A stretch of 63,706 nucleotides of DNA, the filler included, from Reticulomyxa filosa (lineage: Eukaryota; Protista; Foraminifera), in NCBI GenBank assembly GCA_000512085.1. It is 26 parts of 26 records of this genome, joined end to end, with 100 filler letters (N's around TTAATTAATTAA, not from the genome) between each part and the next. Parts side by side here need not be neighbours in the genome. Positions count along the whole stretch, not along the records: positions 56,231 to 58,771 come from ASPP01009069.1; 25 more parts are not named here. One strand, given 5' to 3'. The notes beneath the pieces were generated by a model, which was given only the letters and a program-made list of their open reading frames with translations, was not told the DNA's origin and did no database searches. A program made the translations under genes and the position numbers. The stretch's first letter is position 1. Each line of letters begins with the position of its first letter. Positions 1 through 59,096 of this stretch are shown one piece after another.

Positions 1-3000
1 TGCAACTTTAAATTTTCAGCAAAGAATTCTTTCATCCACTTAATTGCAAACTGTGCTTCTGGACCGAATACGTATGGATTAGTCTCTTTGGATACTTTAA
101 TAATGGGAAGCTTTGACAAAGAGAATATCGAGTGCAACACCTTTTTGTAATCGCTATCACTTCCATTCAATTTGAAAGGCATTTCAATAAAAAATGCCAT
201 GTTTGTATTGACGTGGAAACACTGCGACGCCGGCACATTCAATGTGGTATTGATATGTTGCAAAAATAATAGCTCAAATAAAAACATGTTCATTGAAGCT
301 GAAACGCAAGAGGAAATATCCAAATGATATACTATCAGGTTATCGACGCTGTAATTGAGGGTGGCACATTTGCTCGCAATGCCAATTAAATTTTCTTGCA
401 CCTGCTCCTCATTTGTGCAAGGATGATGCCTCCAAAACCCTTCCATTATACTTTTCCAGTCCATGGTATTACTATTGAATGCGATGCGCACTGCTTGCAT
501 TTTTGGATTAATCTTTCGGATTGAAGCAATATCTTGTTCAATCTTGAAGCTCTTGCCCATGCCAATTTGATCAGAGATATACAGCTGTACAAATGGTTTG
601 CGATTGACTGAGGAATTTGGTGAAGCAAATGCTTCTAATTCGTTACAATACAATTGCTCAATCAAGTGATTTGGAGTCTGGTCATTCATGACAATGCGTT
701 GAGACAAGCGAAAGGGATTTAGTTTTTGAGATAACATGTTATTGGGTGAATTTGACATCACAGCCAATAAATACGGAGTTTTCTTCAATTCATTCAACGC
801 ATTTTCACTCAACAGCAAAGTATGGAACAACTTAAGCACTCGCTCCAATGTTTCCAATGGTAACATTTCTGGCCACATTAAGCAATATAATGGAGGCTGC
901 AAAGCAATTTGTTTTGAAGGGATGGGAGGAGGGGGAGTTGCGGCAAGCTTCTGTTCTTGTTTATCTTGGTAATCTGTTTCTTCGTGGACTTTGGCTGACG
1001 TGATGGCTCGGAACAATAAGCATTCAATTTCCTCTTCTGTCGTATTTTCTTTGCATATCAAAATATGCTCGCTATGAGGAGTGACTCCAACACTTTTGAA
1101 CAACTCCAAAATATTCAGCATTTTATTAGCATTTTGAATTATTAAATTAGGTTTACCATATTCAAGCCCACGTAAGGATACATTACGAGCTACGTCATTC
1201 GAATGTTTCAAATTGGTCCAAATATCGGAAAACACGATCCCAAACTGATCCAATGCTTTATCTCCTTCTGCAGCTTCAAACTTCCATTTTTCGACAAAAG
1301 GTAACGCGTCAGAAAGATTGGAGTCAATACGTTGCAAAAATGGTAAAATAAATTTGGAGCAAAGTAGTGCTCGATGTTCTTGGCCGCAATTTACAATATC
1401 GTTTAACTTTTTGGAAAGACAACGTACTTCGTTGAATGTAAAGTAATTCAATATCGGGTATCTTATTCTCAATTGTGCACATTCTTTTTGCCACTCTTCT
1501 AATCTATTCTTCCATTCACTTTGCAAATCTTTAAACACTTCCAATGGCTCTGTCGCGGACAAATGCAATTTTTTTATCTCTTGCCGACCACCTTTCCTCC
1601 AAAACATCACTCGTAATGTTTCAATATCCTTGCACATGCCAAACTGCTTAATCAGTGACTCCACTTCTTTCAACTCTTTTTCTTTGGAAAATCCTAGCAA
1701 CACACGATCAATAGCCTGCTCGATTTGATCGCAGTTGAGTTTGTCTGATCCAATTTGCAAGACGAGCCACTCATTTGTCTGTTTTTTCTCTTCGCTATTG
1801 TCAATAACAATGGAACTGGCTTGTAATACTTGGTCACATCCAGCAAAATTCCATTGGCCAATTTGGTTTGCTTTTTCCAACAAACTAAAGCTTTGGACAG
1901 CTTGTAATCGACCGGCTTCTTCGACGAGAAAAGAGACACGACTCAGGTCCTCGTCGCAGCACTTTTTGAATTTAACAGTGAAATCATTGTCGCGTTTGTG
2001 AATCGTTAAAATCGCTTTTGCGACCTGGCTTGTCTCTTGTAAATTGGCGTCCCAAATATGCTCGCGAATATTTCCATTGACTGCACGCAATGCGCTCACC
2101 AATTGCTGGAACTGGACTTCCTTGCAATTGTCCAGTGTCTCCATAGTGTTTGCAAAATGCTCTTTGTTTGCAAAGTTTTCGCTAGTCGCCAGCTGTTCGA
2201 TCAGCTGTTTTTTATTTTTCACAATCAAATCTAACAATTCCACACATTGAAAAGCTTCATTTCCAAAGCAGCTGATACATTCATCATAACATTTGGACAA
2301 GTGTTGGATTGAAGGTTCTCGTTCGTTAAGTGCTTTAGAGCTGTTCTCCAATGACTGAACAAAGCAATGCCAATTGTTATCAGTTCTTATTGTGTGACTT
2401 GATTTGTGATATTCTTTTAAAATTTCGGTGGCATCTCTCAGCTTTGTCCAAGGAGTCACCATTTCTCTTAATTGTTTAATCTTTTCACGTTTTTCATGAA
2501 TGCCTTTTGCCATTGCCTCACTTCTTTGCTGAGACCAGTTTGGAAATAGGAATTTCAATTCCAAATTTAAATTACTCGCTTCAAACCATTTCAAATCTTC
2601 CATAGAAAATGACTCCTTTTCTATTGTCTGTCTCAACTCCATCCATTTTTTGCTCACTCGAGTATAGAGTTCGTCCATACTCGTCTCAAACGTCAACTTT
2701 CCTTGCTCTTTCATTTCTGCTCGGTACATGCTCCATAGCTTTTTAAATGCAAAGCTATCCTTGATATCTGCCAAATATTTCATTGTTCCTTCTCGTTTTT
2801 GAAACATCTTTTGTTCAGTCTGATAGCTTTGACATGCTTTTGGAAATGGCTCCAACTCCCAATTGGCACAGAAATTACCAAACTCTTGTAACCGTTCCGA
2901 GAGATCATCAGGAATCATATAATTTGTCGATACCACTGTGTATAACTGTTTCAATCGCACAAATTCTTTGTACTTTTTTAATACGTCCAATAATGCATTG

Positions 3001-4760
3001 ACTTTGTTTTGAATATTGTTGTCTTTCCATTTGGGCAAAGATTTGCTGATCAATTGAATGTTGTTCTTGTTGTTATCACGTTCGAGAAACTCGCACACAC
3101 AAAATGCAATTGACTCATCTTCAGTCATTGTAAATAAATTATTCAATGCCATTTCCATAAAGGTTTGCAAGTGTTTCAATCGTTCCACTTTCGTTGATTC
3201 ACCTTGAATCAATGGCACCACGGGATACACAAAAAGCAATACTCCAAATAATATATTGACAATTTTGGTTTATCTTTGTCTACTTTTTCTTCTTTAGATA
3301 CTGCTTGTTTCTTTTCTTCATCTTCGGGTATTTCTTTATTGTCTTCGTTTTCTTCATTATCTTCGTTTTCTTCATCTTGATTTTCTTTTTTTTCCTCGAT
3401 TGCGTCCTTGTCTTTGTTAACATCTTCTTTATTTACAATCGGTTCCACTTGTACGGGAATATCCACAATAACTTCAAATATTTTGTTCAACAATTTCAAA
3501 TCAACAGATATGGACTTTGTCCCCAAAAGTTTTTTCATTCCCTCCAAAGATTTATCACTCCATTTTTTTCTGCTCAGCAATATTGCCTCTTTTTTCTTTT
3601 CAATTTCAGTTAGAAATATGTTTTGGTATTCACTAAGAAGATTCCAAAATTCGGGATGAGACATCAAAAGCACAAGTTGTTGAGGAGAATCCATGTTTTT
3701 TCCAATCATCTTGTTGTTTATCCAGTCAATCAATCTTTGCGATAAAAAGTCTTTCAAAGTATGCTTTCTTTCCTCTTGCGCTTCATATGTGAACAATTTC
3801 AACCATAATGCAAGCGATTTCTCTTCCATTAGAAGTCTTTTCAGCAATTTTTCAGAGGCATCTTTGACTTGTCTTTCAATAGATCTTTGGTCAAATGAGC
3901 AGTGTTTCCAAAGCATACCAAAAATAGCCATTAATGTATCGACATGATAGACCATCTCCGTTTTGTCAATGTAATGGTCCAATGTTTGCAACACATTTCC
4001 CCAATTTTGCCAAATCATATCTTTATGTTTTAGCATAAAAGAAATGAAAGCAATGAAAGTGTTATTGGACGAAACCACTTCATCTTGAAAGTGTTTTTCA
4101 TTGAATATGCCCAACAATTTTTTACGAACTTGCTCACTCTTTAATGCCCCAATAATTTGGGGTTTCTCCACAAACTGACTCCATTTTTCAAAGTTGCACT
4201 TGTACACATTGCCAATGACATCAGCACATTTCGAACTTTGAGTTGTCCACAGCTTAGCCCACGTCTCTGCCGTCATGAGTTCTTTGTTGGATATCAAAGC
4301 ATTCAATACTTCTTGGGATAAATCATTATCATTTTGCAAATGCAATATGTGCATCAAATGTACTTCTGCGCATAAGTTTGGATTGACACTGGGCAGACGT
4401 CGAATTTTTAGATCCGTTTCGACAACGTCTATACACCGTGCGGCCATTTGTGGCGCTTTCCTAACATTTTTGAAGTCGAACCGTCTCAAAAGCTCGCTGT
4501 TTGCTTGCATGTTTTGTCTACTTGTCAAAAGATTGAAACAAGGGACCAACATAAACTGTTGGAAGCCTTCCGCTTTAGCACACGGCTTCTCTCCACGTAT
4601 GTTGCGTTCTAAGTCACTCAAGAACGCTTTTCTTATAATGTCGATTGTATTGCTTGTTGATGCTGTTATCACACATTTCACTGCAGCAAATAGCTGTGGC
4701 GGAGACAAATATCCTCGTTGTTCTCTGAGTTGTTCGTTTGCAAATATAATTTGATAAATC
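1..4760 (-). CDS. RNF213/mysterin-like giant AAA+ ATPase (partial; runs off window start; one frameshift near 3214)
   Basis: ORF 3209..4708 continues after a 1-nt shift (TGG TGC CA TTG ATT) into a stop-free frame to base 1, which the ORF track does not list. Manual translation gives WQKECAQLRIRYPILNYFT, GKPNLII, HILICKENTTEEEIECLLFRA, PLYCLMWPE, P-loop LYISDQIGMGKS (~549-585) and YHLDISSCVSASMNMFLFELLFL, in the motif order I recall for RNF213. Confidence 0.75.
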
Positions 4761-4774
4761 TATTTTTTTTTTTT

Positions 4775-4874
4775 NNNNNNNNNNNNNNNNNNNNNNNNNN
4801 NNNNNNNNNNNNNNNNNNTTAATTAATTAANNNNNNNNNNNNNNNNNNNNNNNNNNNNNNNNNNNNNNNNNNNN
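4775..4874. other. Artificial contig spacer N44-TTAATTAATTAA-N44 (first of 25; others start at 7175, 10009, 15075, 20306, 22033, 23644, 26153, 31775, 33926, 35937, 37603, 38808, 40018, 41476, 42710, 45701, 49210, 51404, 52666, 53963, 56131, 58772, 60295, 62415)
   Basis: Identical 100-nt blocks with a 12-mer giving stops in all six frames. Composition and gene content change abruptly across them. Confidence 0.99.
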
Positions 4875-4889
4875 TATCTTATGCATTCA

Positions 4890-5410
4890 CTTTCTTTACA
4901 AACTAATGTAGGAAAATAAGCTTACTGACTGAACAGCACTATATCATGCAAATTAAAAGAATATTTTTCCGTTTTTGTTATATTGACGATTATCACAAAG
5001 CCTCGGAAAAATACTACTATCATTCAGATTATTTAAATAGAGCGTTATTTTTACCTAGATGATTCTAAACTTATGTCATGTTCAGGTGATAAAATAATTA
5101 GGATATGGAATGTATAATCAGGAAAACAAAGTTAATTATTAGATAGGTCATTCTAATGTTGTAGTTGAAGCAAAATTTTTATAGAATTATATCTTGTTCA
5201 TAGGATAATACAATTAGATTATTTAGAAAACAAATTCAGATATTTGAAAGACATAAAGATTCTGTTTAAATTTTTTTATTTGAAGACAATTCGTTGTATT
5301 CTAGTGATAAAATTGTCGATATTTGGAAAGTGAAAGATAGTATTTGGAAGAATATAAAAGGTTTAAAAGATGAACAAAAATTGTTTATAAAACAATGTGC
5401 ATTCTTTGAA
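4890..5410 (+). pseudogene. Decayed WD40-repeat gene fragment
   Basis: Fragments such as DDSKLMSCSGDKIIRIWNV, interrupted by stops and frameshifts. Confidence 0.6.
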
Positions 5411-5458
5411 ATGTTGTATATTTTGAAATATTTAATACAAGAAAATAAATTATTTTAA

Positions 5459-6511
5459 TTACCCCCAAATATGAATATTACCATTGCTTAAACCATAACA
5501 TAAAACAATATCATAATTATGATCATTTCTATTTTTTCGTTTATATTCTTGTTTTTTTAATGGTAAAAATTTAACACTATATATTCCATTAGTATTCACA
5601 ATATTATATAATTCATCTTTATTTTTTCGAATATCCCAAAAACGAATTGTACCATCTAATGATCCAGAACATATTACATTAGAATTAAAAGTTTCATTAA
5701 TATTTTTTATTATAAATGGTGAATATTCAACAGATGATATAAAATTTGTATGACCATTAAATAATTGAATTTGTTGATAAGATCGAATATCCCATAAACG
5801 AATAGTATTATCACCAGATCCAGAACATAAATATCGACCATTATTAAATTGTGAAAATTCGATACCTCCAACCCAACTAGTATGTTCATTTAATATTTGT
5901 AATTGTTTATTATGCTTAACATCCCAAAAACGAATTGTATTATCATCTGAAGAAGAGCAAATAATATGACGACGTTGATTATAATAATAATAATGTGAAA
6001 ATTTTACACAATATACAAAAGATGAATGTCCATTAAATAATTTAATTTGTTTATTATCTTCAATATTCCATATATGAATTGTTTTATCAGTTGATCCAGA
6101 ATAAATAAATTGATTACTATTAAATGTTGAATAATCAATACTATTTACACAATGATTATGTCCATTGAATGATTTAAGTAATTTGGATGATGAACGAAAT
6201 ATATCAAATATGAAGAAAGTATTTACCTGTATTAAATAGTAATTAATAATGCAAAATATATTGATTACAATTAAATAAATAAAAAAACTTAACATAATCA
6301 ACAATAAGTTTGTCAAAATCATTGATCCATCCAAATTTGATATGTAATATTCGGATCCAATATTGTATAATTACTTGAATATCTTTTTCTTCTTTTTCTG
6401 ACTAATTCAAAAATAGAATAAAATACAAGATAGTTCGTTTTTAAAAGTTGAAAGAAAGCTTACCAATGCTGAGTACGCTGATGTTTGCTTTTCATTGTAA
6501 AAAGTTGTCAT
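5459..6511 (-). CDS. WD40-repeat protein (expanded family, 2 introns near 5' end)
   Basis: Repeats GH..(V)..(FS)..SGS.D.TIR.WD in ORF 5459..6334. Likely ATG at 6511 followed by a GTAAGC donor, and an N-terminal motif IQYWIRILHIKFGWINDFDKLIVDY. Confidence 0.85.
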
Positions 6512-7069
6512 TCTTTCGATGATGTAAAATGGAAAAGGATTTTTTTTTTTGAACAGTAGTGAAAGATGGTAAAATGTACAATCTTTTGTTTTAATTTTAA
6601 TCTAGCTTTTCTGGGTTGGGTTTTATTAGAAAAGGACAAAACTGGAGTGGAAAACAGAACCATAATTGCAGATAACTTTTTAAAATAGAATGGAATTTGC
6701 TTGCCTTGTGTTTTGATTTGAAATATTTGAAAGATTTGGAAGAAAAAAAAAGGATGATTAAATCAACATGTAATAAAGTGCAACTTGATTGTATTAACTT
6801 TTCTCAATAGTTAACAATCAAATATATGTCAAACATAGACAAATGAGATATAGCATAATTTCAAAACCAACAAGAAATATTTGAGTATACATGATAATCA
6901 ACTTTCATCCCTTTTTCGTGATCTATTGCAAATTGAAAATTCTCTTTAAAAAGACCTCTTTGCGGATGGAATGATGTTTTCCGAAAATAAAAAAATTAAA
7001 GATTATCAATCTTCTTTTGAATCAAACATAATTTTTTTTGAAAAATCATAGTTCATTGACATTAACAAC

Positions 7070-53962: not shown

Positions 53963-56311
53963 NNNNNNNNNNNNNNNNNNNNNNNNNNNNNNNNNNNNNN
54001 NNNNNNTTAATTAATTAANNNNNNNNNNNNNNNNNNNNNNNNNNNNNNNNNNNNNNNNNNNNTTTTTTTTAATAGAAAAAATGTTGACAAAATTGGACTA
54101 AAAAATTGTATTATGCGAACAAAGCTTTACAAAGTTTATGCAGTCTATAGATAAATTGTATATATGTACCAACAAATCGAAAAAGTTTTATAACAGTTAT
54201 AACAAAGCAGTCGCTAAGCTACTAGTGCATATATAGTCATTATACACAAAACATAGTTATCAGTCTGCCGAGTTTCATGACGGACTTTCAAAAAGAAAAA
54301 AAAGATTGTACGTATGAAGACTACAAAGAAGACCATGAAGATTATGACCCAAAAGAAAATTCTTCAATTTGAAGACTATGATTCTTAATTCGAACAAACA
54401 TCAGTTTCTGTCGTGAATACAAGTGGAATATACAAAATTTTTTGCCTTTGGACGTCGTATATCGCAAGAATTGAAAAAAATGATAAAATTAATTTGATAA
54501 ATGTTGGCAATTGATCGATTAAAACATAATGTTTTACAACATAACTTTAGTGTATTTTTTTTTTTTTTTTGATGTTTTAATTGAATTTTTTTTGAATCAG
54601 GTGCTTTGTAACAAAAGGCATTTGGTATATTGATGCAGATATTACAAACAACTGATCAAATTGAAAATGAAGTACGCTCATTACTGTAGCTCTTACAATG
54701 AAAACTCTTGATGAAATCTAAAAGACTTTCGCTTAGTTCATCGAAAGTTGAAGAAACTCAAGAAAGGGGCGTTGGAACATTGAGACAAATCTGCAGACAA
54801 AACCAGGAAAGAGCTTGTCGAAACATTCATTCAAGCTGACAATATTCGCGACATGCGCACAACAATTAGAAACAAATGCTGCACGTTCAAAATATTCAGC
54901 CAAAAGGATATACTGCATTCTATCAGTAGAAATGGACTTGTTCTAAGATACATAAGTCTATAATAGACTCGATCCGTATTTGCGAATGTTCAGGCGAACA
55001 CAATTAACAAGACCAAATATTTGGACGATAATACATACAGTGTCTCGCATTAACATCAATATCACTATTCTGCAGTAGAAAATATACTTTGCACAGTACA
55101 TGCACATCGACAGCAAGATTCCCAAATGTCATCGTCGTCAATCCAAATGTCACCACACAACAACAATTTACATATTGGTTGAATTAGATTATGACATCGT
55201 CTAGTAATCAATTATTGAGTCTAAAATATCATTATACTGTTTTGACCATATGATAGCATTTTTCAATCTTTTTTTTTAGTTGCTACATATATATATTTAT
55301 TGTTATAATATGATTTTAGTTTTGCGTAATAAATCTAATAAAAAACTACAATAAAACTTATACCATTTGACGTTAAAATAAAAACTAACGATTATACAAA
55401 AGATAGATCATTGACAGAAAAGTCTGCATAAGAAAAAAAAGAATAAGAAGACATTTGCGCAAACACAACGACCGTTGCCTGTATAATTGAAAAAAATCGA
55501 AATAGACTTACATACACCAACTAATGGTGGTGGTTGTAAATAAGTGGAAATTGTCGTTTAAAAAAAAAAATTTACTAACAAATTATTACGTAATAATAAT
55601 GACCATACACTTAAATGCTAATTTTTGTACTTACATCTTCCAACATTCGTTTGAATGGACAACAGCTTTATATCATTAAATGACAAAAAATTAATATTCC
55701 TGTTTGCAACGAATGAAGTTTAAGCAAAACGAATTTTTGATGAAATAGTATTAACTATGATATGTTTCTAACCAAAAAGCAAAGCGATAATATTATAACA
55801 ACTTCGGTGCAATAATATAATTGAATCAATGCAATATTTTTGAATTTGAATTTGGTTTTAAATTGATCGCACAATAATTGATGAGAATTGATTTTGAAGC
55901 AATATAGCAAAAAAAAGAAGTACAGAAGGTTTAGCAACACTTTGGAGCGAAAAAGGAATCTACACATCCACGCAAAATAGAGAGCTATTGTACATGGCTA
56001 TCAAACACTAGCTGATAATAAACTAGGCTTCGAAGATAAAAGCGTGGATGTTGTAAAACTATTGAAAAAGCAACAATACAAAAATCAAATCCGAATAAAC
56101 AATTTATCACTATCTTTCTTCAAACTTTCANNNNNNNNNNNNNNNNNNNNNNNNNNNNNNNNNNNNNNNNNNNNTTAATTAATTAANNNNNNNNNNNNNN
56201 NNNNNNNNNNNNNNNNNNNNNNNNNNNNNNTTTTTTTTTTTTAAAGTGTATTATAACGTATACGTGGGTTTATAGCAACATTTTTTTGTATTGTATTGGA
56301 TCACTAAATAG

Positions 56312-58740
56312 CAAAGACACGAGTCCACGTGCTGATGACACATTTTGTCCCAGCCTTTGATGTGATACAAAAACTGAACGCACTGAACGCAGAGAATTTG
56401 AAATCGACGTTTTTGACGCAACCGAAGAATGCGTATTTGAAACAACGCGCCATTGGCGAGGAGTATCGGTACATTTTGGAGAGACAAAAGGAACCGCATT
56501 TTGTTGGCAACAGTTTGCAACGACCGTCGTTGTTGATAAAGCCGTTGGAAGTGAAATCCACCAGGACTGCGATCAAGCATGCCAAAACAGGTGGTTCGGT
56601 CCAGCAACAGTCGCTGCCATCGGGTTCGAAAGCGTTCACGTCAACCAATTATGCGAGTCGTTTCGCGAGTGCGAGAAATTTATCGGATAGGGACAGAGAT
56701 GACAACTGCTTGGACTTTTTGATTGCAGAGGCGACAGTCTTGTGCAATTTGAAACCAAACGCAAGCGGAGTGGTTCAAATCGACGCGTCCGAGATTCACA
56801 ACAGCCACACGTTGGTGCGCTGTGTGGCGGCGGACCAAGACCGGGTGGTGTTGTCGTCGCTCGTGTTGTCGTCCAAGAAGAGCACGGAAAAGAGCGATCA
56901 CAAGTCGGAAGAACAGGACAAGGAAGTATCGAAATTCGAGTATGGCGATTTGAGACTGTATCCTGGCTTGGATCCCACCAAGCGATTTACCGAGGCGAGG
57001 GACATTGAACTGTTGGCAGCCAAAGGTGATACGTACCAAGTAACCGATTTCAAATCGTCAGAAGTGGTGACCTTCGACACGGTGGGCGATGCATTCAATT
57101 ATTATGCTTCATTGTCCTCGTCGACCAAAATCGAACTGAAGAAAAGCTGGAAGTTTTTAACGAACTGGCACAACTTGAAGGAGAGCAAACGATTGAGTTA
57201 TTTGGAAGAATACTTTTCGCACGAATTGAACCTGTTTTGTTCAAGAAAGATGCACCGTTTTTCAACGAGGTGTGCAAACCGTTGATCCAATCCAAGCTGC
57301 GCAAAGACATTGTGGATTTGTATTTGCTCGGCCATTTCGACGCTTTGGAAGAATATGCCAATGTAAATGCCTTTGACAAGATGAATGCCTTGGAAAAAAT
57401 ATTAGTGGCACACGCTACCAAAGACAAAGACTTCCGTGCCATGGTGAAAAAACACTTTGTGAAAAAACAGGAAATGATCGAGGAAAACTTGAAACGCTTG
57501 GACGAGTTGTTCACGACGGCCATCAAATGTAAGCAAATGCAAAGTCAAAGTTCTGATTATCGACCAAGCACTCCTTCAAAGAACAGAGAAAAGGAAAAGG
57601 ACAAGAGCAAGAGCAAGAGCAAGAAGTCCGATTCGGACGAAGACGACGATGATGATGAAAGCAGTGAAGCCAGCCAAAGAGGTGGTGGTGGTGGTGATGG
57701 CAGAGCTGTTGGTACCGGCTCAATGACAATCTTTTTGAGGACGTTGACTGGCAAAGTGGTGAACATCAATGTCAACCCAACCGATTCCGTCTCCATTTTA
57801 AAAATGAAAATACAAGACTCAGAAGGAATACCGCCAGATCAGCAGAGACTCATATATAGTGGCAAACAAATGGACGACGATAAAACCTTGCAAGATTATT
57901 CCATTGGTCCCAATGCTACAATACATTTGGTACTGCGCTTGAGAGGAGGGTGCTTTGTTGCCGGCACTTTGGTACGAATGAGCGATGGAACACTGAAGAA
58001 AATTGAAGATATTGCCAGTGGGGATATCGTGTACTCCATGATGGTTGAGAAAACTCAGGTGCTTGCTTGTTTGTAGCAATTGTTGTTGTGTGTACATTTT
58101 TTGTAAAAAAAAAAAAAAAGGGGGGGGTAATATTTTGTGACGTATACGAAAGAGAATTTTTTTTTTCCCCCCGATAGTCTGTGACCACCTGTGCTGTAAG
58201 AAATGTACATCAATTCTTTGTTTCGGAATTGTGCGAAATTGAATTTAGTGATGGCAGCAAAATGATGACGACCCCACAACACCCTATTTATGTCGTAAAT
58301 AAAGGCTGGAGTTGCGTCGACCCGTTTGTCGAAAATGCCAAACACGATAAGGTGTTACAAAAGGGAGATGAAGTGTTCAAATTTGATAATTTAAGCCAAG
58401 GAACTGAACAGTGCCCAAAATTTTCATCAGTGTCTGTGTCCAGTATTCGACATGTATATGCGATCAAGACAATCAAGAGGTCCTTGTCTATACCTTGCAT
58501 TTGGATGATGGTTGCCATACGTACTTTGCCCAAGATATTTTGGTGCACAATACTTTGAGGCTGACCATTCAAACCTCAGACGACAGCTTTATATTAAACG
58601 TGGAATCGGAAATGACCGTGGCACAAATTAAACAGCTGATCGGATTACGCACCGGCCAAGATGTTGCCAACATCCCATTGACTCATCGTGGAGAAATCTT
58701 AGAAAATACTGAAACATTATCGTCTCGTGGAATTTTCAAA
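56312..58740 (+). CDS. Large protein (AbpF-like segment) - ubiquitin - Hint - ubiquitin-like fusion; both ends truncated
   Basis: ORFs 56329, 57237, 58181 and 58411 join through a homopolymer -1 shift at ~57237 (restores ELNLFLFKKD), a phase-0 GT-AG intron 58059-58177, and a -1 shift at ~58460. Confidence 0.8.
57723..57950 (+). other. Internal ubiquitin domain (76 aa, ends LRLRGG)
   Basis: 46/76 identical to canonical ubiquitin by manual alignment. L8, I44, V70, K48, R72 and G75-G76 are kept; K6, K33 and K63 are lost. Confidence 0.95.
57951..58551 (+). other. Hint (intein-like/BIL-like) autoprocessing domain, ~160 aa, no homing endonuclease
   Basis: Block [30 protein letters not shown]; block B TTPQHPIY; GW; LQKGD; block [16 protein letters not shown]; block G ILVHN followed by Thr. 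Confidence 0.92.
58552..58740 (+). other. Second, divergent ubiquitin-like domain (C-terminus lost at intron/contig end)
   Basis: [26 protein letters not shown]...G....[21 protein letters not shown] follows the beta-grasp pattern. Confidence 0.75.
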
Positions 58741-59096
58741 GTTGGTTTAATTTTTTTTTTTTTTTTTTTTTNNNNNNNNNNNNNNNNNNNNNNNNNNNNN
58801 NNNNNNNNNNNNNNNTTAATTAATTAANNNNNNNNNNNNNNNNNNNNNNNNNNNNNNNNNNNNNNNNNNNNAAAAAAAAAAAAGGCCATTTTGACAACGT
58901 ATCAAAAGAAGATAAGGACTACAAAATATACATTGCAAAAATAAAAAAGCTGCTTTTATTAAAATGAAAACACTTAGCATAAAAATGTTTGAATGATAAA
59001 AAAAAAATCGGATATCCACCCCAACTTGTTCAACTGACAGAATGGAGCCAGAATTGAACAACAGCGTGTACCTCTTTTTTTGTCCACTATACAATG

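What the first reader, a model, noticed from the sequence alone, without database searches (positions are those of the whole stretch)
57723..58740. Ubiquitin-GG|Hint|ubiquitin-like cassette: candidate self-activating (E1/ATP-independent) ubiquitin conjugation or splicing module
Seen: a 76-aa ubiquitin (46/76 identical to canonical Ub; I44 patch, K48, R72, GG intact) ends at 57950. The very next codon is Cys1 of a Hint domain (CFVAGTLV...TTPQHP...VYTL...HTYFA..ILVHN). After the terminal Asn comes Thr and a second Ubl. A GT-AG intron (58059-58177) inside the Hint shows this is a eukaryotic nuclear gene, not bacterial contamination. Established: Hint/intein Cys1 performs an N-S acyl shift on the preceding peptide bond; TxxH, His-Asn and a +1 Cys/Ser/Thr are the canonical splicing residues; ubiquitin/BIL-Hint fusions (BUBL) are known from the ciliate Tetrahymena. 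Inference: the shift makes a Gly76 thioester, chemically the same as an E1/E2~Ub intermediate but without ATP. It could resolve by cis-splicing to the Ubl, by hydrolysis, or by transfer to a target Lys/Ser/Thr. I do not know of this architecture in a rhizarian-like genome or inside a large carrier protein.
Basis: partly seen in the sequence, partly recalled or inferred. Interest (0 to 1): 0.92.

Follow-up and report, generated by a model that had tools for sequence, protein, structure and literature searches.

The report
Foraminiferan ubiquitin–Hint–ubiquitin-like (BUBL) cassette
This Reticulomyxa filosa contig carries a ubiquitin, a self-cleaving Hint domain and a second ubiquitin-like domain set inside a large host gene; this design is already known and tested in the ciliate Tetrahymena, so it is a new, mis-annotated member of that kind and not a new mechanism.

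Summary
The piece is Reticulomyxa filosa contig ASPP01009069.1 (gene RFI_12495). It encodes a 76-aa ubiquitin ending LRLRGG (57723-57950), followed directly by Cys1 of a Hint domain. A 119-nt GT-AG intron (58059-58177) splits the Hint, which ends His-Asn (58546-58551). Thr+1 and a second ubiquitin-like domain follow, up to the exon end at 58740. An intact R. filosa paralogue (ETO18620.1, 760 aa) is colinear with it. Its Hint passes Pfam thresholds, and its best solved relative by sequence and by fold is Tetrahymena BIL2 of the BUBL1 locus. BIL2 has been shown experimentally to conjugate ubiquitin-like domains without ATP. New here: the foraminiferan lineage, a public gene model that stops inside the intron and misses the Hint, and strong evidence from the paralogue that the cassette is inserted in a linker of a giant uncharacterised host protein with bacterial homologues. 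No RNA or read data confirm the intron, the frame or activity. Verdict: new member of a known kind, moderate interest.

The parts
56231..56311 (+). 3' part of an upstream intron (contig starts in poly-T); acceptor AG at 56310-56311, phase 1
   Evidence: Homology to bacterial host-family proteins and to the paralogue starts upstream of the annotated ATG ([10 protein letters not shown]). The paralogue has the same ..atag|ca.. junction.
56312..57237 (+). Host protein segment, first reading frame (annotated ATG at 56335 is probably internal)
   Evidence: tblastn with P0046 residues 176-462, E 6e-32. 51% identical to the paralogue P0001. No Pfam or NCBIfam family.
57235..57238 (+). Frameshift 1: T4 run where the paralogue's reading (..NLFLFKKD..) needs one more base
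   Evidence: Frame change seen. The public model P0045 bridges it with an invented intron.
57240..57722 (+). Rest of the host segment (to about 57530), then a K/E/D/G-rich low-complexity linker
   Evidence: linker only 29% identical to the paralogue; 100% identical to P0045.
57723..57950 (+). Ubiquitin domain, 76 aa, ending LRLRGG
   Evidence: Pfam PF00240 E 1.3e-28; PDB ubiquitin E about 1e-28.
57951..58058 (+). Hint/BIL domain N-terminal exon part: Cys1, block A ([14 protein letters not shown]..)
   Evidence: Hint-clan profiles start at their first positions right after GG. Aligns to the family junction LRLRGG|CF..GT. 79% identical to the paralogue.
58059..58177 (+). Spliceosomal intron, 119 nt, GT..AG, phase 0, homopolymer-rich
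   Evidence: Same position and phase as the 82-nt intron of the paralogue (L001 4656-4737). Transcript-derived foraminiferan homologues are continuous across this point. In-frame stop if read through.
58178..58459 (+). Hint middle part with block B T-x-x-H (58271-58282) and [15 protein letters not shown]
   Evidence: phmmer against 1.84 billion proteins: 43 hits, best P0001 at E 8e-31, then Ub-Hint-Ub proteins of Nonionella. Pho RadA intein E 0.0026 with block B aligned.
58460..58461 (+). Frameshift 2: two leftover bases where the paralogue has a full codon (one base missing)
   Evidence: Frames. tblastn frame switch. Piece tiling in alignment A1.
58462..58551 (+). Hint C-terminal part: [18 protein letters not shown]; terminal His-Asn at 58546-58551
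   Evidence: 83% identical to the paralogue, pN 0.08. Family C-junction ..LVHN|.
58552..58740 (+). Thr+1 and second ubiquitin-like domain (63 aa, lacks its last strand and tail)
   Evidence: Pfam PF00240 E 1.5e-7, 31.5 bits against cutoff 25.4. Aligns to the downstream Ubl of BUBL units. A 196-nt contig of another run is 96% identical at 58532-58727.
58741..58771 (+). 5' part of the next intron (donor GT at 58741-58742), running into the poly-T at the contig end
   Evidence: The paralogue has the same ..aaa|gtt.. boundary at L001 5298/5299.

Best explanation
The piece is a fragment of a nuclear gene of the foraminiferan Reticulomyxa filosa (contig ASPP01009069.1, RFI_12495). A BUBL-type cassette, made of ubiquitin, a bacterial-intein-like (BIL) Hint domain and a ubiquitin-like domain, sits in a low-complexity linker of a very large, uncharacterised host protein that has bacterial homologues. 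Inferred mechanism, by homology with Tetrahymena BIL2: Cys1 attacks the Gly76-Cys1 peptide bond (N-S acyl shift), helped by the block B His. This gives a [host N-part-ubiquitin]-Gly76 thioester without E1 or ATP. The thioester can resolve in three ways: (a) transfer to Thr+1 followed by Asn cyclisation, which is cis-splicing and leaves host-Ub-Ubl-host; (b) attack by a lysine, giving an isopeptide-linked conjugate as reported for BIL2; (c) hydrolysis, which with Asn cyclisation splits the host into two ubiquitin-tagged halves. Shown here: the domain order, the junction residues, the intron, homology, purifying selection and the host context. Inferred only: any chemistry, which of the three outcomes dominates, and whether this copy (two 1-nt frameshifts) is expressed.
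For: Identity of the piece: P0045 (RFI_12495) is 100% identical to the window translation and lies on a 2541-nt contig of GCA_000512085.1. Domains: ubiquitin E 1.3e-28 and Ubl2 E 1.5e-7. The three Hint pieces tile the whole Hint of intact homologues, with C1, TxxH, His-Asn and Thr+1 all present. The intact paralogue P0001 (ETO18620.1) has the same order. Its Hint passes the Pfam cutoffs for Intein_splicing (37.0 against 35.8) and Hint (30.7 against 29.7). Its best PDB match by sequence is 6Y75/6TMM BIL2 (E 5e-7). Its AlphaFold model (pLDDT 82.6) superposes on BIL2 at TM 0.88-0.90 and rmsd 2.2 A. BIL2 is reported to form Lys isopeptide bonds without ATP (PMC8616854). Selection: against the paralogue, synonymous sites are saturated (pS 0.64-1.0) while pN is 0.08-0.21 in the Hint and 0.27 in ubiquitin, and there are no in-frame stops. 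Host context: bacterial homologues P0046 and P0047 align colinearly with L001 on both sides of the cassette, and the cassette has no counterpart in them. Other Ub-Hint-Ub(l) proteins occur in Nonionella stella and Bolivina argentea transcriptomes.
Against: There are two 1-nt frameshifts in 2.4 kb of coding sequence. No RNA run holds the stretch, and the laid contigs do not cover the intron or the frameshifts. The window's own Hint pieces are individually below Pfam cutoffs. The +1 residue is not conserved in the wider family (A, S, K, G, D, T), so splicing through +1 is not a family rule. The ubiquitin's N-terminus stays fused to the host part, unlike in poly-BUBL proteins, so a free 'dispensed' ubiquitin is not expected. 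The link from Ubl2 to the downstream host part is inferred from the paralogue only and there needs a 1-base correction or a 9-nt micro-exon.
Confidence: 0.78

Rival explanations
1. This copy is a recently inactivated pseudogene paralogue of a functional BUBL-carrying host gene. The two frameshifts are real, and only the other copy (ETO18620.1 on ASPP01014659.1) works.
For: Two independent 1-nt frameshifts. The second is not in a long homopolymer. This ubiquitin is much more diverged (46/76 to canonical) than the paralogue's near-canonical one (81-84% identical to human ubiquitin). No RNA holder was found.
Against: No in-frame stop in about 2.3 kb of coding sequence despite saturated synonymous divergence, and pN is low in the Hint (0.08-0.21). 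All catalytic residues are intact. Frameshift 1 is a T4/T5 homopolymer miscount, typical of an assembly error. The contig is a short fragment of a draft assembly, ending in homopolymers at both ends.
Confidence: 0.25
2. The Hint is only a self-cleaving protease that cuts the host protein in two at the Ub-GG and Asn|Thr junctions. No transfer of the thioester to Thr+1 or to lysines has any biological role.
For: A-type BIL domains often only cleave (review PMC5874633). The +1 residue varies in the family, including Ala, Gly, Lys and Asp. Bolivina P0035 ends ..LVHI without the Asn.
Against: Thr+1 is kept in both R. filosa paralogues. The nearest characterised relative, BIL2, does form conjugates. 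The strict conservation of a ubiquitin LRLRGG tail directly before Cys1 across the family suggests the acyl donor matters.
Confidence: 0.2
3. It is a canonical mobile intein that happens to lie between two ubiquitin-like domains.
For: Cys1, TxxH, His-Asn and a +1 Thr are the full class-1 splicing set. Weak sequence matches to archaeal inteins.
Against: It has no homing endonuclease (about 160 aa in total). It is not inserted in a conserved motif of the host but in a linker. It is flanked by Ub and Ubl exactly as in BUBL units. Its best sequence and fold match is BIL2, not an intein.
Confidence: 0.04
4. Assembly chimera or contamination: the ubiquitin, Hint and host parts do not belong to one gene.
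For: Short draft contig bounded by homopolymers. The host part has mainly bacterial homologues.
Against: The same order, the same two intron positions and the same junctions occur on an independent 7-kb contig (L001). Spliceosomal introns interrupt both the host part and the Hint.
Confidence: 0.02

Closest known systems
BUBL proteins of ciliates (BIL-ubiquitin-like; Dassa, Yanai and Pietrokovski 2004), in particular BIL2 of the Tetrahymena thermophila BUBL1 locus (PDB 6Y75, 6TMM; Chiarini et al. 2021, cited in PMC8616854)
   Same: A BIL-type Hint flanked by ubiquitin-like domains. The upstream Ub(l) tail abuts Cys1. Terminal His-Asn is present. BIL2 is the best sequence (E 5e-7) and fold (TM 0.88-0.90) match of the paralogue's Hint. 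It is embedded in a larger protein (the Tetrahymena chains are named as an ADP-ribosyltransferase polyprotein).
   Different: Foraminifera, not ciliates. A single cassette, not a Ubl/BIL array. About 26-28% identity to BIL2. Inserted mid-way in an unrelated giant host protein, so the ubiquitin's N-terminus is not freed by an upstream BIL. Thr at +1. Activity untested.
Reticulomyxa filosa ETO18620.1 / X6MX68 'Ubiquitin family protein' (P0001)
   Same: Paralogue with the same host segment, linker, Ub, Hint, intron positions, Thr+1 and Ubl2. It is 51-83% identical by segment.
   Different: Intact reading frame, near-canonical ubiquitin, and a 7-kb contig that also shows the host parts before and after the cassette.
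Ub-Hint-Ub(l) proteins of Nonionella stella and Bolivina argentea transcriptomes and of metagenomes (P0002, P0006/P0044, P0035, P0027, P0032, P0033)
   Same: The same LRLRGG|CF..GT and ..LVHN| junctions. Several are inserted in host proteins whose sequence continues after a last Ubl that lacks GG.
   Different: Other host families (an FQRTLR[IL]P...AAGG.IKQKIY family; a PUB-domain protein). Often two or three cassettes in tandem. The +1 residue is A, S, K, G or D.
Canonical mini-inteins and bacterial A-type BIL domains (for example Clostridium thermocellum BIL, 2LWY; Ssp DnaB mini-intein)
   Same: Hint fold and the Cys1 / TxxH / His-Asn chemistry (fold TM 0.77-0.85).
   Different: No ubiquitin flanks. 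Inteins sit in conserved host motifs and restore the host protein.
Hedgehog/Hog Hint domains
   Same: A Gly-Cys N-junction and a thioester that is resolved by an external nucleophile.
   Different: No sterol-recognition region after the Hint. A terminal His-Asn plus a C-extein is present here.

Membership tests
BUBL (BIL-ubiquitin-like) cassette | Hint/BIL domain flanked on both sides by ubiquitin-fold domains | tested here: met
   Pfam ubiquitin E 1.3e-28 upstream and E 1.5e-7 downstream. Tiling on BUBL units in alignment A1.
BUBL (BIL-ubiquitin-like) cassette | The upstream ubiquitin(-like) C-terminal tail (..RGG) directly abuts Cys1 of the Hint | tested here: met
   LRLRGG|CFVAGT at 57933-57968. 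The same junction occurs in 15 or more family units.
BUBL (BIL-ubiquitin-like) cassette | Hint catalytic set: Cys1, block B TxxH, C-terminal His-Asn | tested here: met
   Cys at 57951-57953, TPQH at 58271-58282, HN at 58546-58551.
BUBL (BIL-ubiquitin-like) cassette | Hint domain closest to the characterised BUBL BIL2, not to inteins or Hog | tested here: met
   Tested on the intact paralogue, which is 66-83% identical to the window's Hint pieces. 6Y75/6TMM is the best PDB sequence hit (E 5e-7) and the best non-ubiquitin fold hit (TM 0.88-0.90). The window pieces alone do not reach 6Y75.
BUBL (BIL-ubiquitin-like) cassette | Uninterrupted, expressed reading frame | tested here: inconclusive
   Two 1-nt frameshifts (57235-57238, 58460-58461). 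No RNA holder, and the laid contigs do not cover these sites. Strong purifying selection argues for error or very recent damage.
BUBL (BIL-ubiquitin-like) cassette | Autocatalytic cleavage, splicing or ATP-independent conjugation | not testable with these tools
   Known only for Tetrahymena BIL2 (PMC8616854).
Canonical intein | Inserted in a conserved site of the host protein, with exteins that are host sequence restored by splicing | tested here: not met
   The flanks are Ub and Ubl, and the cassette lies in a low-complexity linker that is short and non-conserved in bacterial homologues.
Canonical intein | +1 Cys/Ser/Thr nucleophile | tested here: met
   Thr at 58552-58554, also Thr in the paralogue.
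Hedgehog/Hog | Sterol/adduct recognition region after the Hint, with no C-extein | tested here: not met
   The Hint ends His-Asn and is followed directly by a Ubl.
Alpha-2-macroglobulin-like proteins (candidate family for the host protein) | MG domains, bait region, thioester domain | tested here: inconclusive
   Only weak leads: Atlas feature score 0.78 and Salmonella A2M as top fold match at Z 4.9 on a model of pLDDT 67.5. No Pfam or NCBIfam match.

The most novel reading that the evidence does not exclude
In Foraminifera the Ub-BIL-Ubl cassette behaves as an insertable module that has entered the linkers of at least three unrelated large host proteins. These are the giant bacterial-type protein here, the FQRTLR[IL]P family, and a PUB-domain protein. 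Translation would then yield a host protein that either re-stitches itself with a Ub-Ubl scar, or breaks into two halves. In the second case the N-half carries a self-activated ubiquitin thioester and can attach itself covalently to lysines of the C-half or of other proteins. That would be E1-independent 'protein-ubiquitin-protein' ligation of whole host fragments, not dispensing of free ubiquitin.
Probability: 0.4. Interest if true: 0.7.

Novelty: new member of a known kind. Interest (0 to 1): 0.45.

Why it matters
BUBL cassettes are the only natural case in which a ubiquitin C-terminus is activated by a Hint thioester and not by E1 and ATP. So far they are described, and tested, only in ciliates. 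Their presence in Foraminifera, under long-term purifying selection and set inside large host proteins, widens the range of this chemistry. It also offers single-cassette versions that are simpler to test than the ciliate arrays. In practical terms, the public R. filosa annotation is wrong at both loci. RFI_12495 stops inside the Hint intron, and on ASPP01014659.1 one gene appears to be split into three models, so the architecture is hidden from domain databases for this copy.

Tried and rejected
- The look-up of sequencing runs found one run, with 4% of the sampled words. Its contigs cover only short low-complexity or ubiquitin stretches plus 58532-58727 at 96% identity, so they say nothing about the intron, the frameshifts or expression.
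- Pfam and PDB searches with single Hint pieces of the window gave only sub-threshold Hint-clan, intein and AXH hits. I used the intact paralogue as a proxy and did not join the pieces.
- The two primary BUBL papers (PMID 15475112 and 33444728) are not held. Their content is cited only through PMC8616854.
- Paper searches for Reticulomyxa with intein, and for BIL with ubiquitin and Tetrahymena, found no description of foraminiferan BUBL.
- Host protein function: no Pfam or NCBIfam family. The AlphaFold model is poor (pLDDT 67.5). The best fold hit, Salmonella alpha-2-macroglobulin at Z 4.9, does not stand out from generic beta-sandwiches, so I rejected it as an identification.
- A word-indexed search with the paralogue's Hint region added only tandem-BIL proteins.
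- The canonical-intein, Hedgehog-type and contamination readings were considered and rejected (see the rival explanations and the membership test).
Full report
**What the piece is**

Only places 56231-58771 are genome. The translated piece is 100% identical to Reticulomyxa filosa protein RFI_12495 (P0045, 561 aa). That protein is encoded on the 2541-nt contig ASPP01009069.1 of assembly GCA_000512085.1. The contig begins and ends in poly-T.

**Checking the observation**

- **Ubiquitin.** Places 57723-57950 encode a 76-aa ubiquitin (Pfam PF00240 E 1.3e-28). It is 46/76 identical to canonical ubiquitin by the alignment. It keeps L8, I44, H68, V70, K11, K27, K29, K48 and the LRLRGG tail. K6, K33 and K63 are replaced.
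- **Hint start.** The next codon is Cys (57951), opening [14 protein letters not shown]. Several Hint-clan profiles (Hint, Hom_end_hint, Hint_2, Vint) start to align there, each below its cutoff because only 36 residues precede the intron.
- **Intron.** Reading on from 58058 meets a stop. The stretch 58059-58177 is 119 nt, GT..AG, phase 0.
- **Hint middle.** The frame resumes at 58178 with block B (T-P-Q-H at 58271-58282) and [15 protein letters not shown].
- **Frameshift in the Hint.** At 58460-58461 one base is missing relative to the paralogue.
- **Hint end and Ubl2.** The last Hint part (58462-58551) reads [18 protein letters not shown]. Thr+1 (58552-58554) follows, then a second ubiquitin-fold domain (Pfam E 1.5e-7, above cutoff).
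- **End of the piece.** That exon ends at 58740 with a GT donor at 58741, and the contig stops in the intron's poly-T. The C-terminal strand and tail of Ubl2 are therefore not in the piece.
- **Upstream frameshift.** A second 1-nt frameshift lies in a T4 run at 57235-57238 in the upstream host part.

The intact paralogue served as the full-length proxy.

**The paralogue and the intron**

A phmmer scan of 1.84 billion representatives with the middle Hint exon found 43 proteins. The best is P0001 (E 8e-31), which is R. filosa ETO18620.1 / X6MX68, "Ubiquitin family protein", 760 aa, on the 7-kb contig ASPP01014659.1 (L001). P0001 aligns with the window over its whole length in four frame segments at 49-66% identity.

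Its Hint intron (L001 4656-4737, 82 nt) lies at the same codon boundary and in the same phase as the window's, with unrelated intron sequence. The upstream acceptor (..atag|ca..) and the donor after ..K of Ubl2 are shared as well. Transcript-derived homologues from Nonionella stella are continuous across the intron site. Together with the in-frame stop, this supports the intron without RNA data.

The public model RFI_12495 bridges frameshift 1 with an invented intron. It then reads into the Hint intron and stops (..[10 protein letters not shown]). It therefore lacks most of the Hint and all of Ubl2, and carries only ubiquitin Pfam hits.

**Family assignment**

- The paralogue's Hint (P0001:515-672) passes the Pfam gathering scores for Intein_splicing and Hint.
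- Its best match among all PDB sequences is 6Y75/6TMM, the BIL2 domain of the Tetrahymena thermophila BUBL1 locus (E 5e-7).
- An AlphaFold model of Ub-Hint-Ubl (pLDDT 82.6) superposes on BIL2 at TM 0.88-0.90 and rmsd 2.2 A. This is ahead of a bacterial BIL (0.85) and of mini-inteins.
- In a 16-row alignment (A1) the three window pieces tile the complete unit and carry every conserved motif.
- A survey of junctions shows the family signature LRLRGG|CF..GT ... F[FY]A...LVHN|X. The +1 residue varies (A, S, K, G, D, T); both R. filosa copies have Thr.

According to the depositors (PMC8616854), BIL2 is flanked by two Ubl domains. It splices by an unusual route that forms a Lys isopeptide bond, and it conjugates the upstream Ubl to other proteins without ATP.

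**Is this copy alive?**

Against the paralogue, synonymous sites are saturated (pS 0.64-1.0). Non-synonymous differences are few: pN 0.08-0.21 in the Hint, 0.27 in ubiquitin and 0.35 in Ubl2. There is no in-frame stop in about 2.3 kb. Both copies have therefore been under purifying selection for nearly all of their divergence.

Frameshift 1 is a homopolymer miscount, typical of an assembly error. Frameshift 2 is not in a long run. The only run that holds related sequence has no contig over either site or over the intron. I put a real, recent pseudogene at about 0.25.

**Context: the carrier protein**

The sequence upstream of the ubiquitin has no Pfam or NCBIfam family. It does belong to a large family of giant hypothetical proteins of Verrucomicrobiota, Planctomycetota, Myxococcota and other bacteria (90 hits, E down to 1e-282 for the bacterial query).

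On L001 these bacterial proteins align colinearly with three consecutive annotated genes:

| Bacterial protein, residues | L001 places | What lies there |
|---|---|---|
| P0047 413-786 | 1149-2412 | upstream annotated gene |
| P0046 1-168 | 2341-2868 | upstream annotated gene |
| P0046 158-554 | 2919-4169 | host part of P0001 |
| none | about 4320-5300 | Ub-Hint-Ubl cassette |
| P0046 601-758 | 5628-6140 | downstream annotated gene |

Homology also runs upstream of both annotated start codons (TRVHVL.THF) and upstream of the downstream gene's ATG. The cassette is therefore an insertion into a poorly conserved linker of one very long host gene, which the annotation split into three.

How Ubl2 connects to the downstream part is not settled. 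A candidate exon (L001 5440-5494) supplies the missing Ubl strand (DATFDLII..) but ends in a stop. It would join the next exon in frame only if an A7 run is off by one base, or through the annotated 9-nt micro-exon.

In another host family the continuity is directly visible. Nonionella P0044 and metagenomic P0027, P0032 and P0033 run from the last Ubl, which lacks GG, straight into conserved host sequence. Bolivina P0035 carries the cassette after a PUB domain.

What the host does remains unknown. An alpha-2-macroglobulin likeness is only a weak lead.

**Mechanism**

Shown: the residues needed for the N-S acyl shift (Cys1, block B His), for Asn cyclisation (His-Asn) and for transesterification (Thr+1) are present and conserved between the paralogues.

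Inferred: translation gives host-N-Ub-GG|Hint|T-Ubl(-host-C). Cys1 forms a Gly76 thioester. This resolves in one of three ways:
- Cis-splicing, which keeps the host continuous with a Ub-Ubl insert. Deubiquitinases could later cut that insert after GG.
- Lysine attack, giving a branched conjugate as reported for BIL2.
- Hydrolysis, which cuts the host in two.

The ubiquitin's N-terminus stays attached to the host part. The transferable unit would therefore be "host fragment-ubiquitin", not free ubiquitin, which differs from the tandem ciliate and Nonionella arrays. I cannot rank the three outcomes from sequence.

**Novelty and verdict**

The kind is known (BUBL, 2004; structure and ATP-independent conjugation, 2019-2021). 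I found no paper describing it in Foraminifera, but the paralogue and other foraminiferan proteins are already in public databases with Hint-family hits.

This is a new, mis-annotated member of a known kind, with one architectural twist worth following up: a single cassette inserted in large host proteins. I rate interest at 0.45. The more novel reading, an insertable module that makes host proteins self-ligating or self-splitting, is not excluded (about 0.4).

Noticed in passing
L001 (ASPP01014659.1) 54-6932: Three consecutive annotated R. filosa genes (826, 760 and 390 aa) are colinear with single giant bacterial proteins (P0046, P0047). They are probably one gene split by the annotation, and homology extends upstream of two of the annotated ATGs.
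   Followed up: partly
window 56312-57530; P0046-P0134: The host segment belongs to a large family of very long hypothetical proteins, without any Pfam family, in Verrucomicrobiota, Planctomycetota, Myxococcota and others. A conserved core motif is [10 protein letters not shown]. Its presence in a foraminiferan raises the question of gene transfer. Alpha-2-macroglobulin likeness is only a weak lead (Atlas 0.78; fold Z 4.9).
   Followed up: partly
P0044, P0032, P0027, P0033, P0023, P0028: A second, unrelated host family (N-side FQRTLR[IL]P..PLPP.LG, C-side AAGG.IKQKIY..) carries one to three Ub-Hint units. The last Ubl lacks GG and runs directly into host sequence. It is seen in the Nonionella stella transcriptome and in several metagenomes.
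   Followed up: partly
P0035 (Bolivina argentea): A PUB-domain protein followed by Ub and a Hint that has a roughly 25-aa insertion after block A and ends ..LVHI in place of His-Asn. This points to N-terminal cleavage or transfer only.
   Followed up: no
P0004, P0015, P0021, P0040 and others among the 43 hits: Proteins made of two to seven head-to-tail BIL/Hint domains with only 0-3 residues between ..LVHN and the next CF..GT, and no ubiquitin. Such arrays would excise themselves into free Hint domains. Their source organisms are unknown.
   Followed up: no
P0001:515-672; window 57951-58058 and 58178-58459: The Pfam AXH family (Ataxin-1/HBP1 module) matches these Hint domains above its own gathering score (35.3 against 33), and Ataxin-1 structures are the top PDB hits of the 36-aa Hint N-terminal exon (E 0.003). 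This suggests AXH is a Hint derivative, or that the profiles overlap.
   Followed up: no
window 58532-58727: A 196-nt contig from an unrelated public run (coded X1, 2015) is 96% identical across the Hint/Ubl2 junction. Of five internal differences, two are synonymous and three are replacements, so it is a close allele, paralogue or related strain.
   Followed up: partly
window 58093-58136 and contig ends: Introns of this gene are full of long homopolymers (A14, G8, T10, C6), and the contig breaks at poly-T at both ends. This probably explains why the assembly is fragmented exactly at introns.
   Followed up: no
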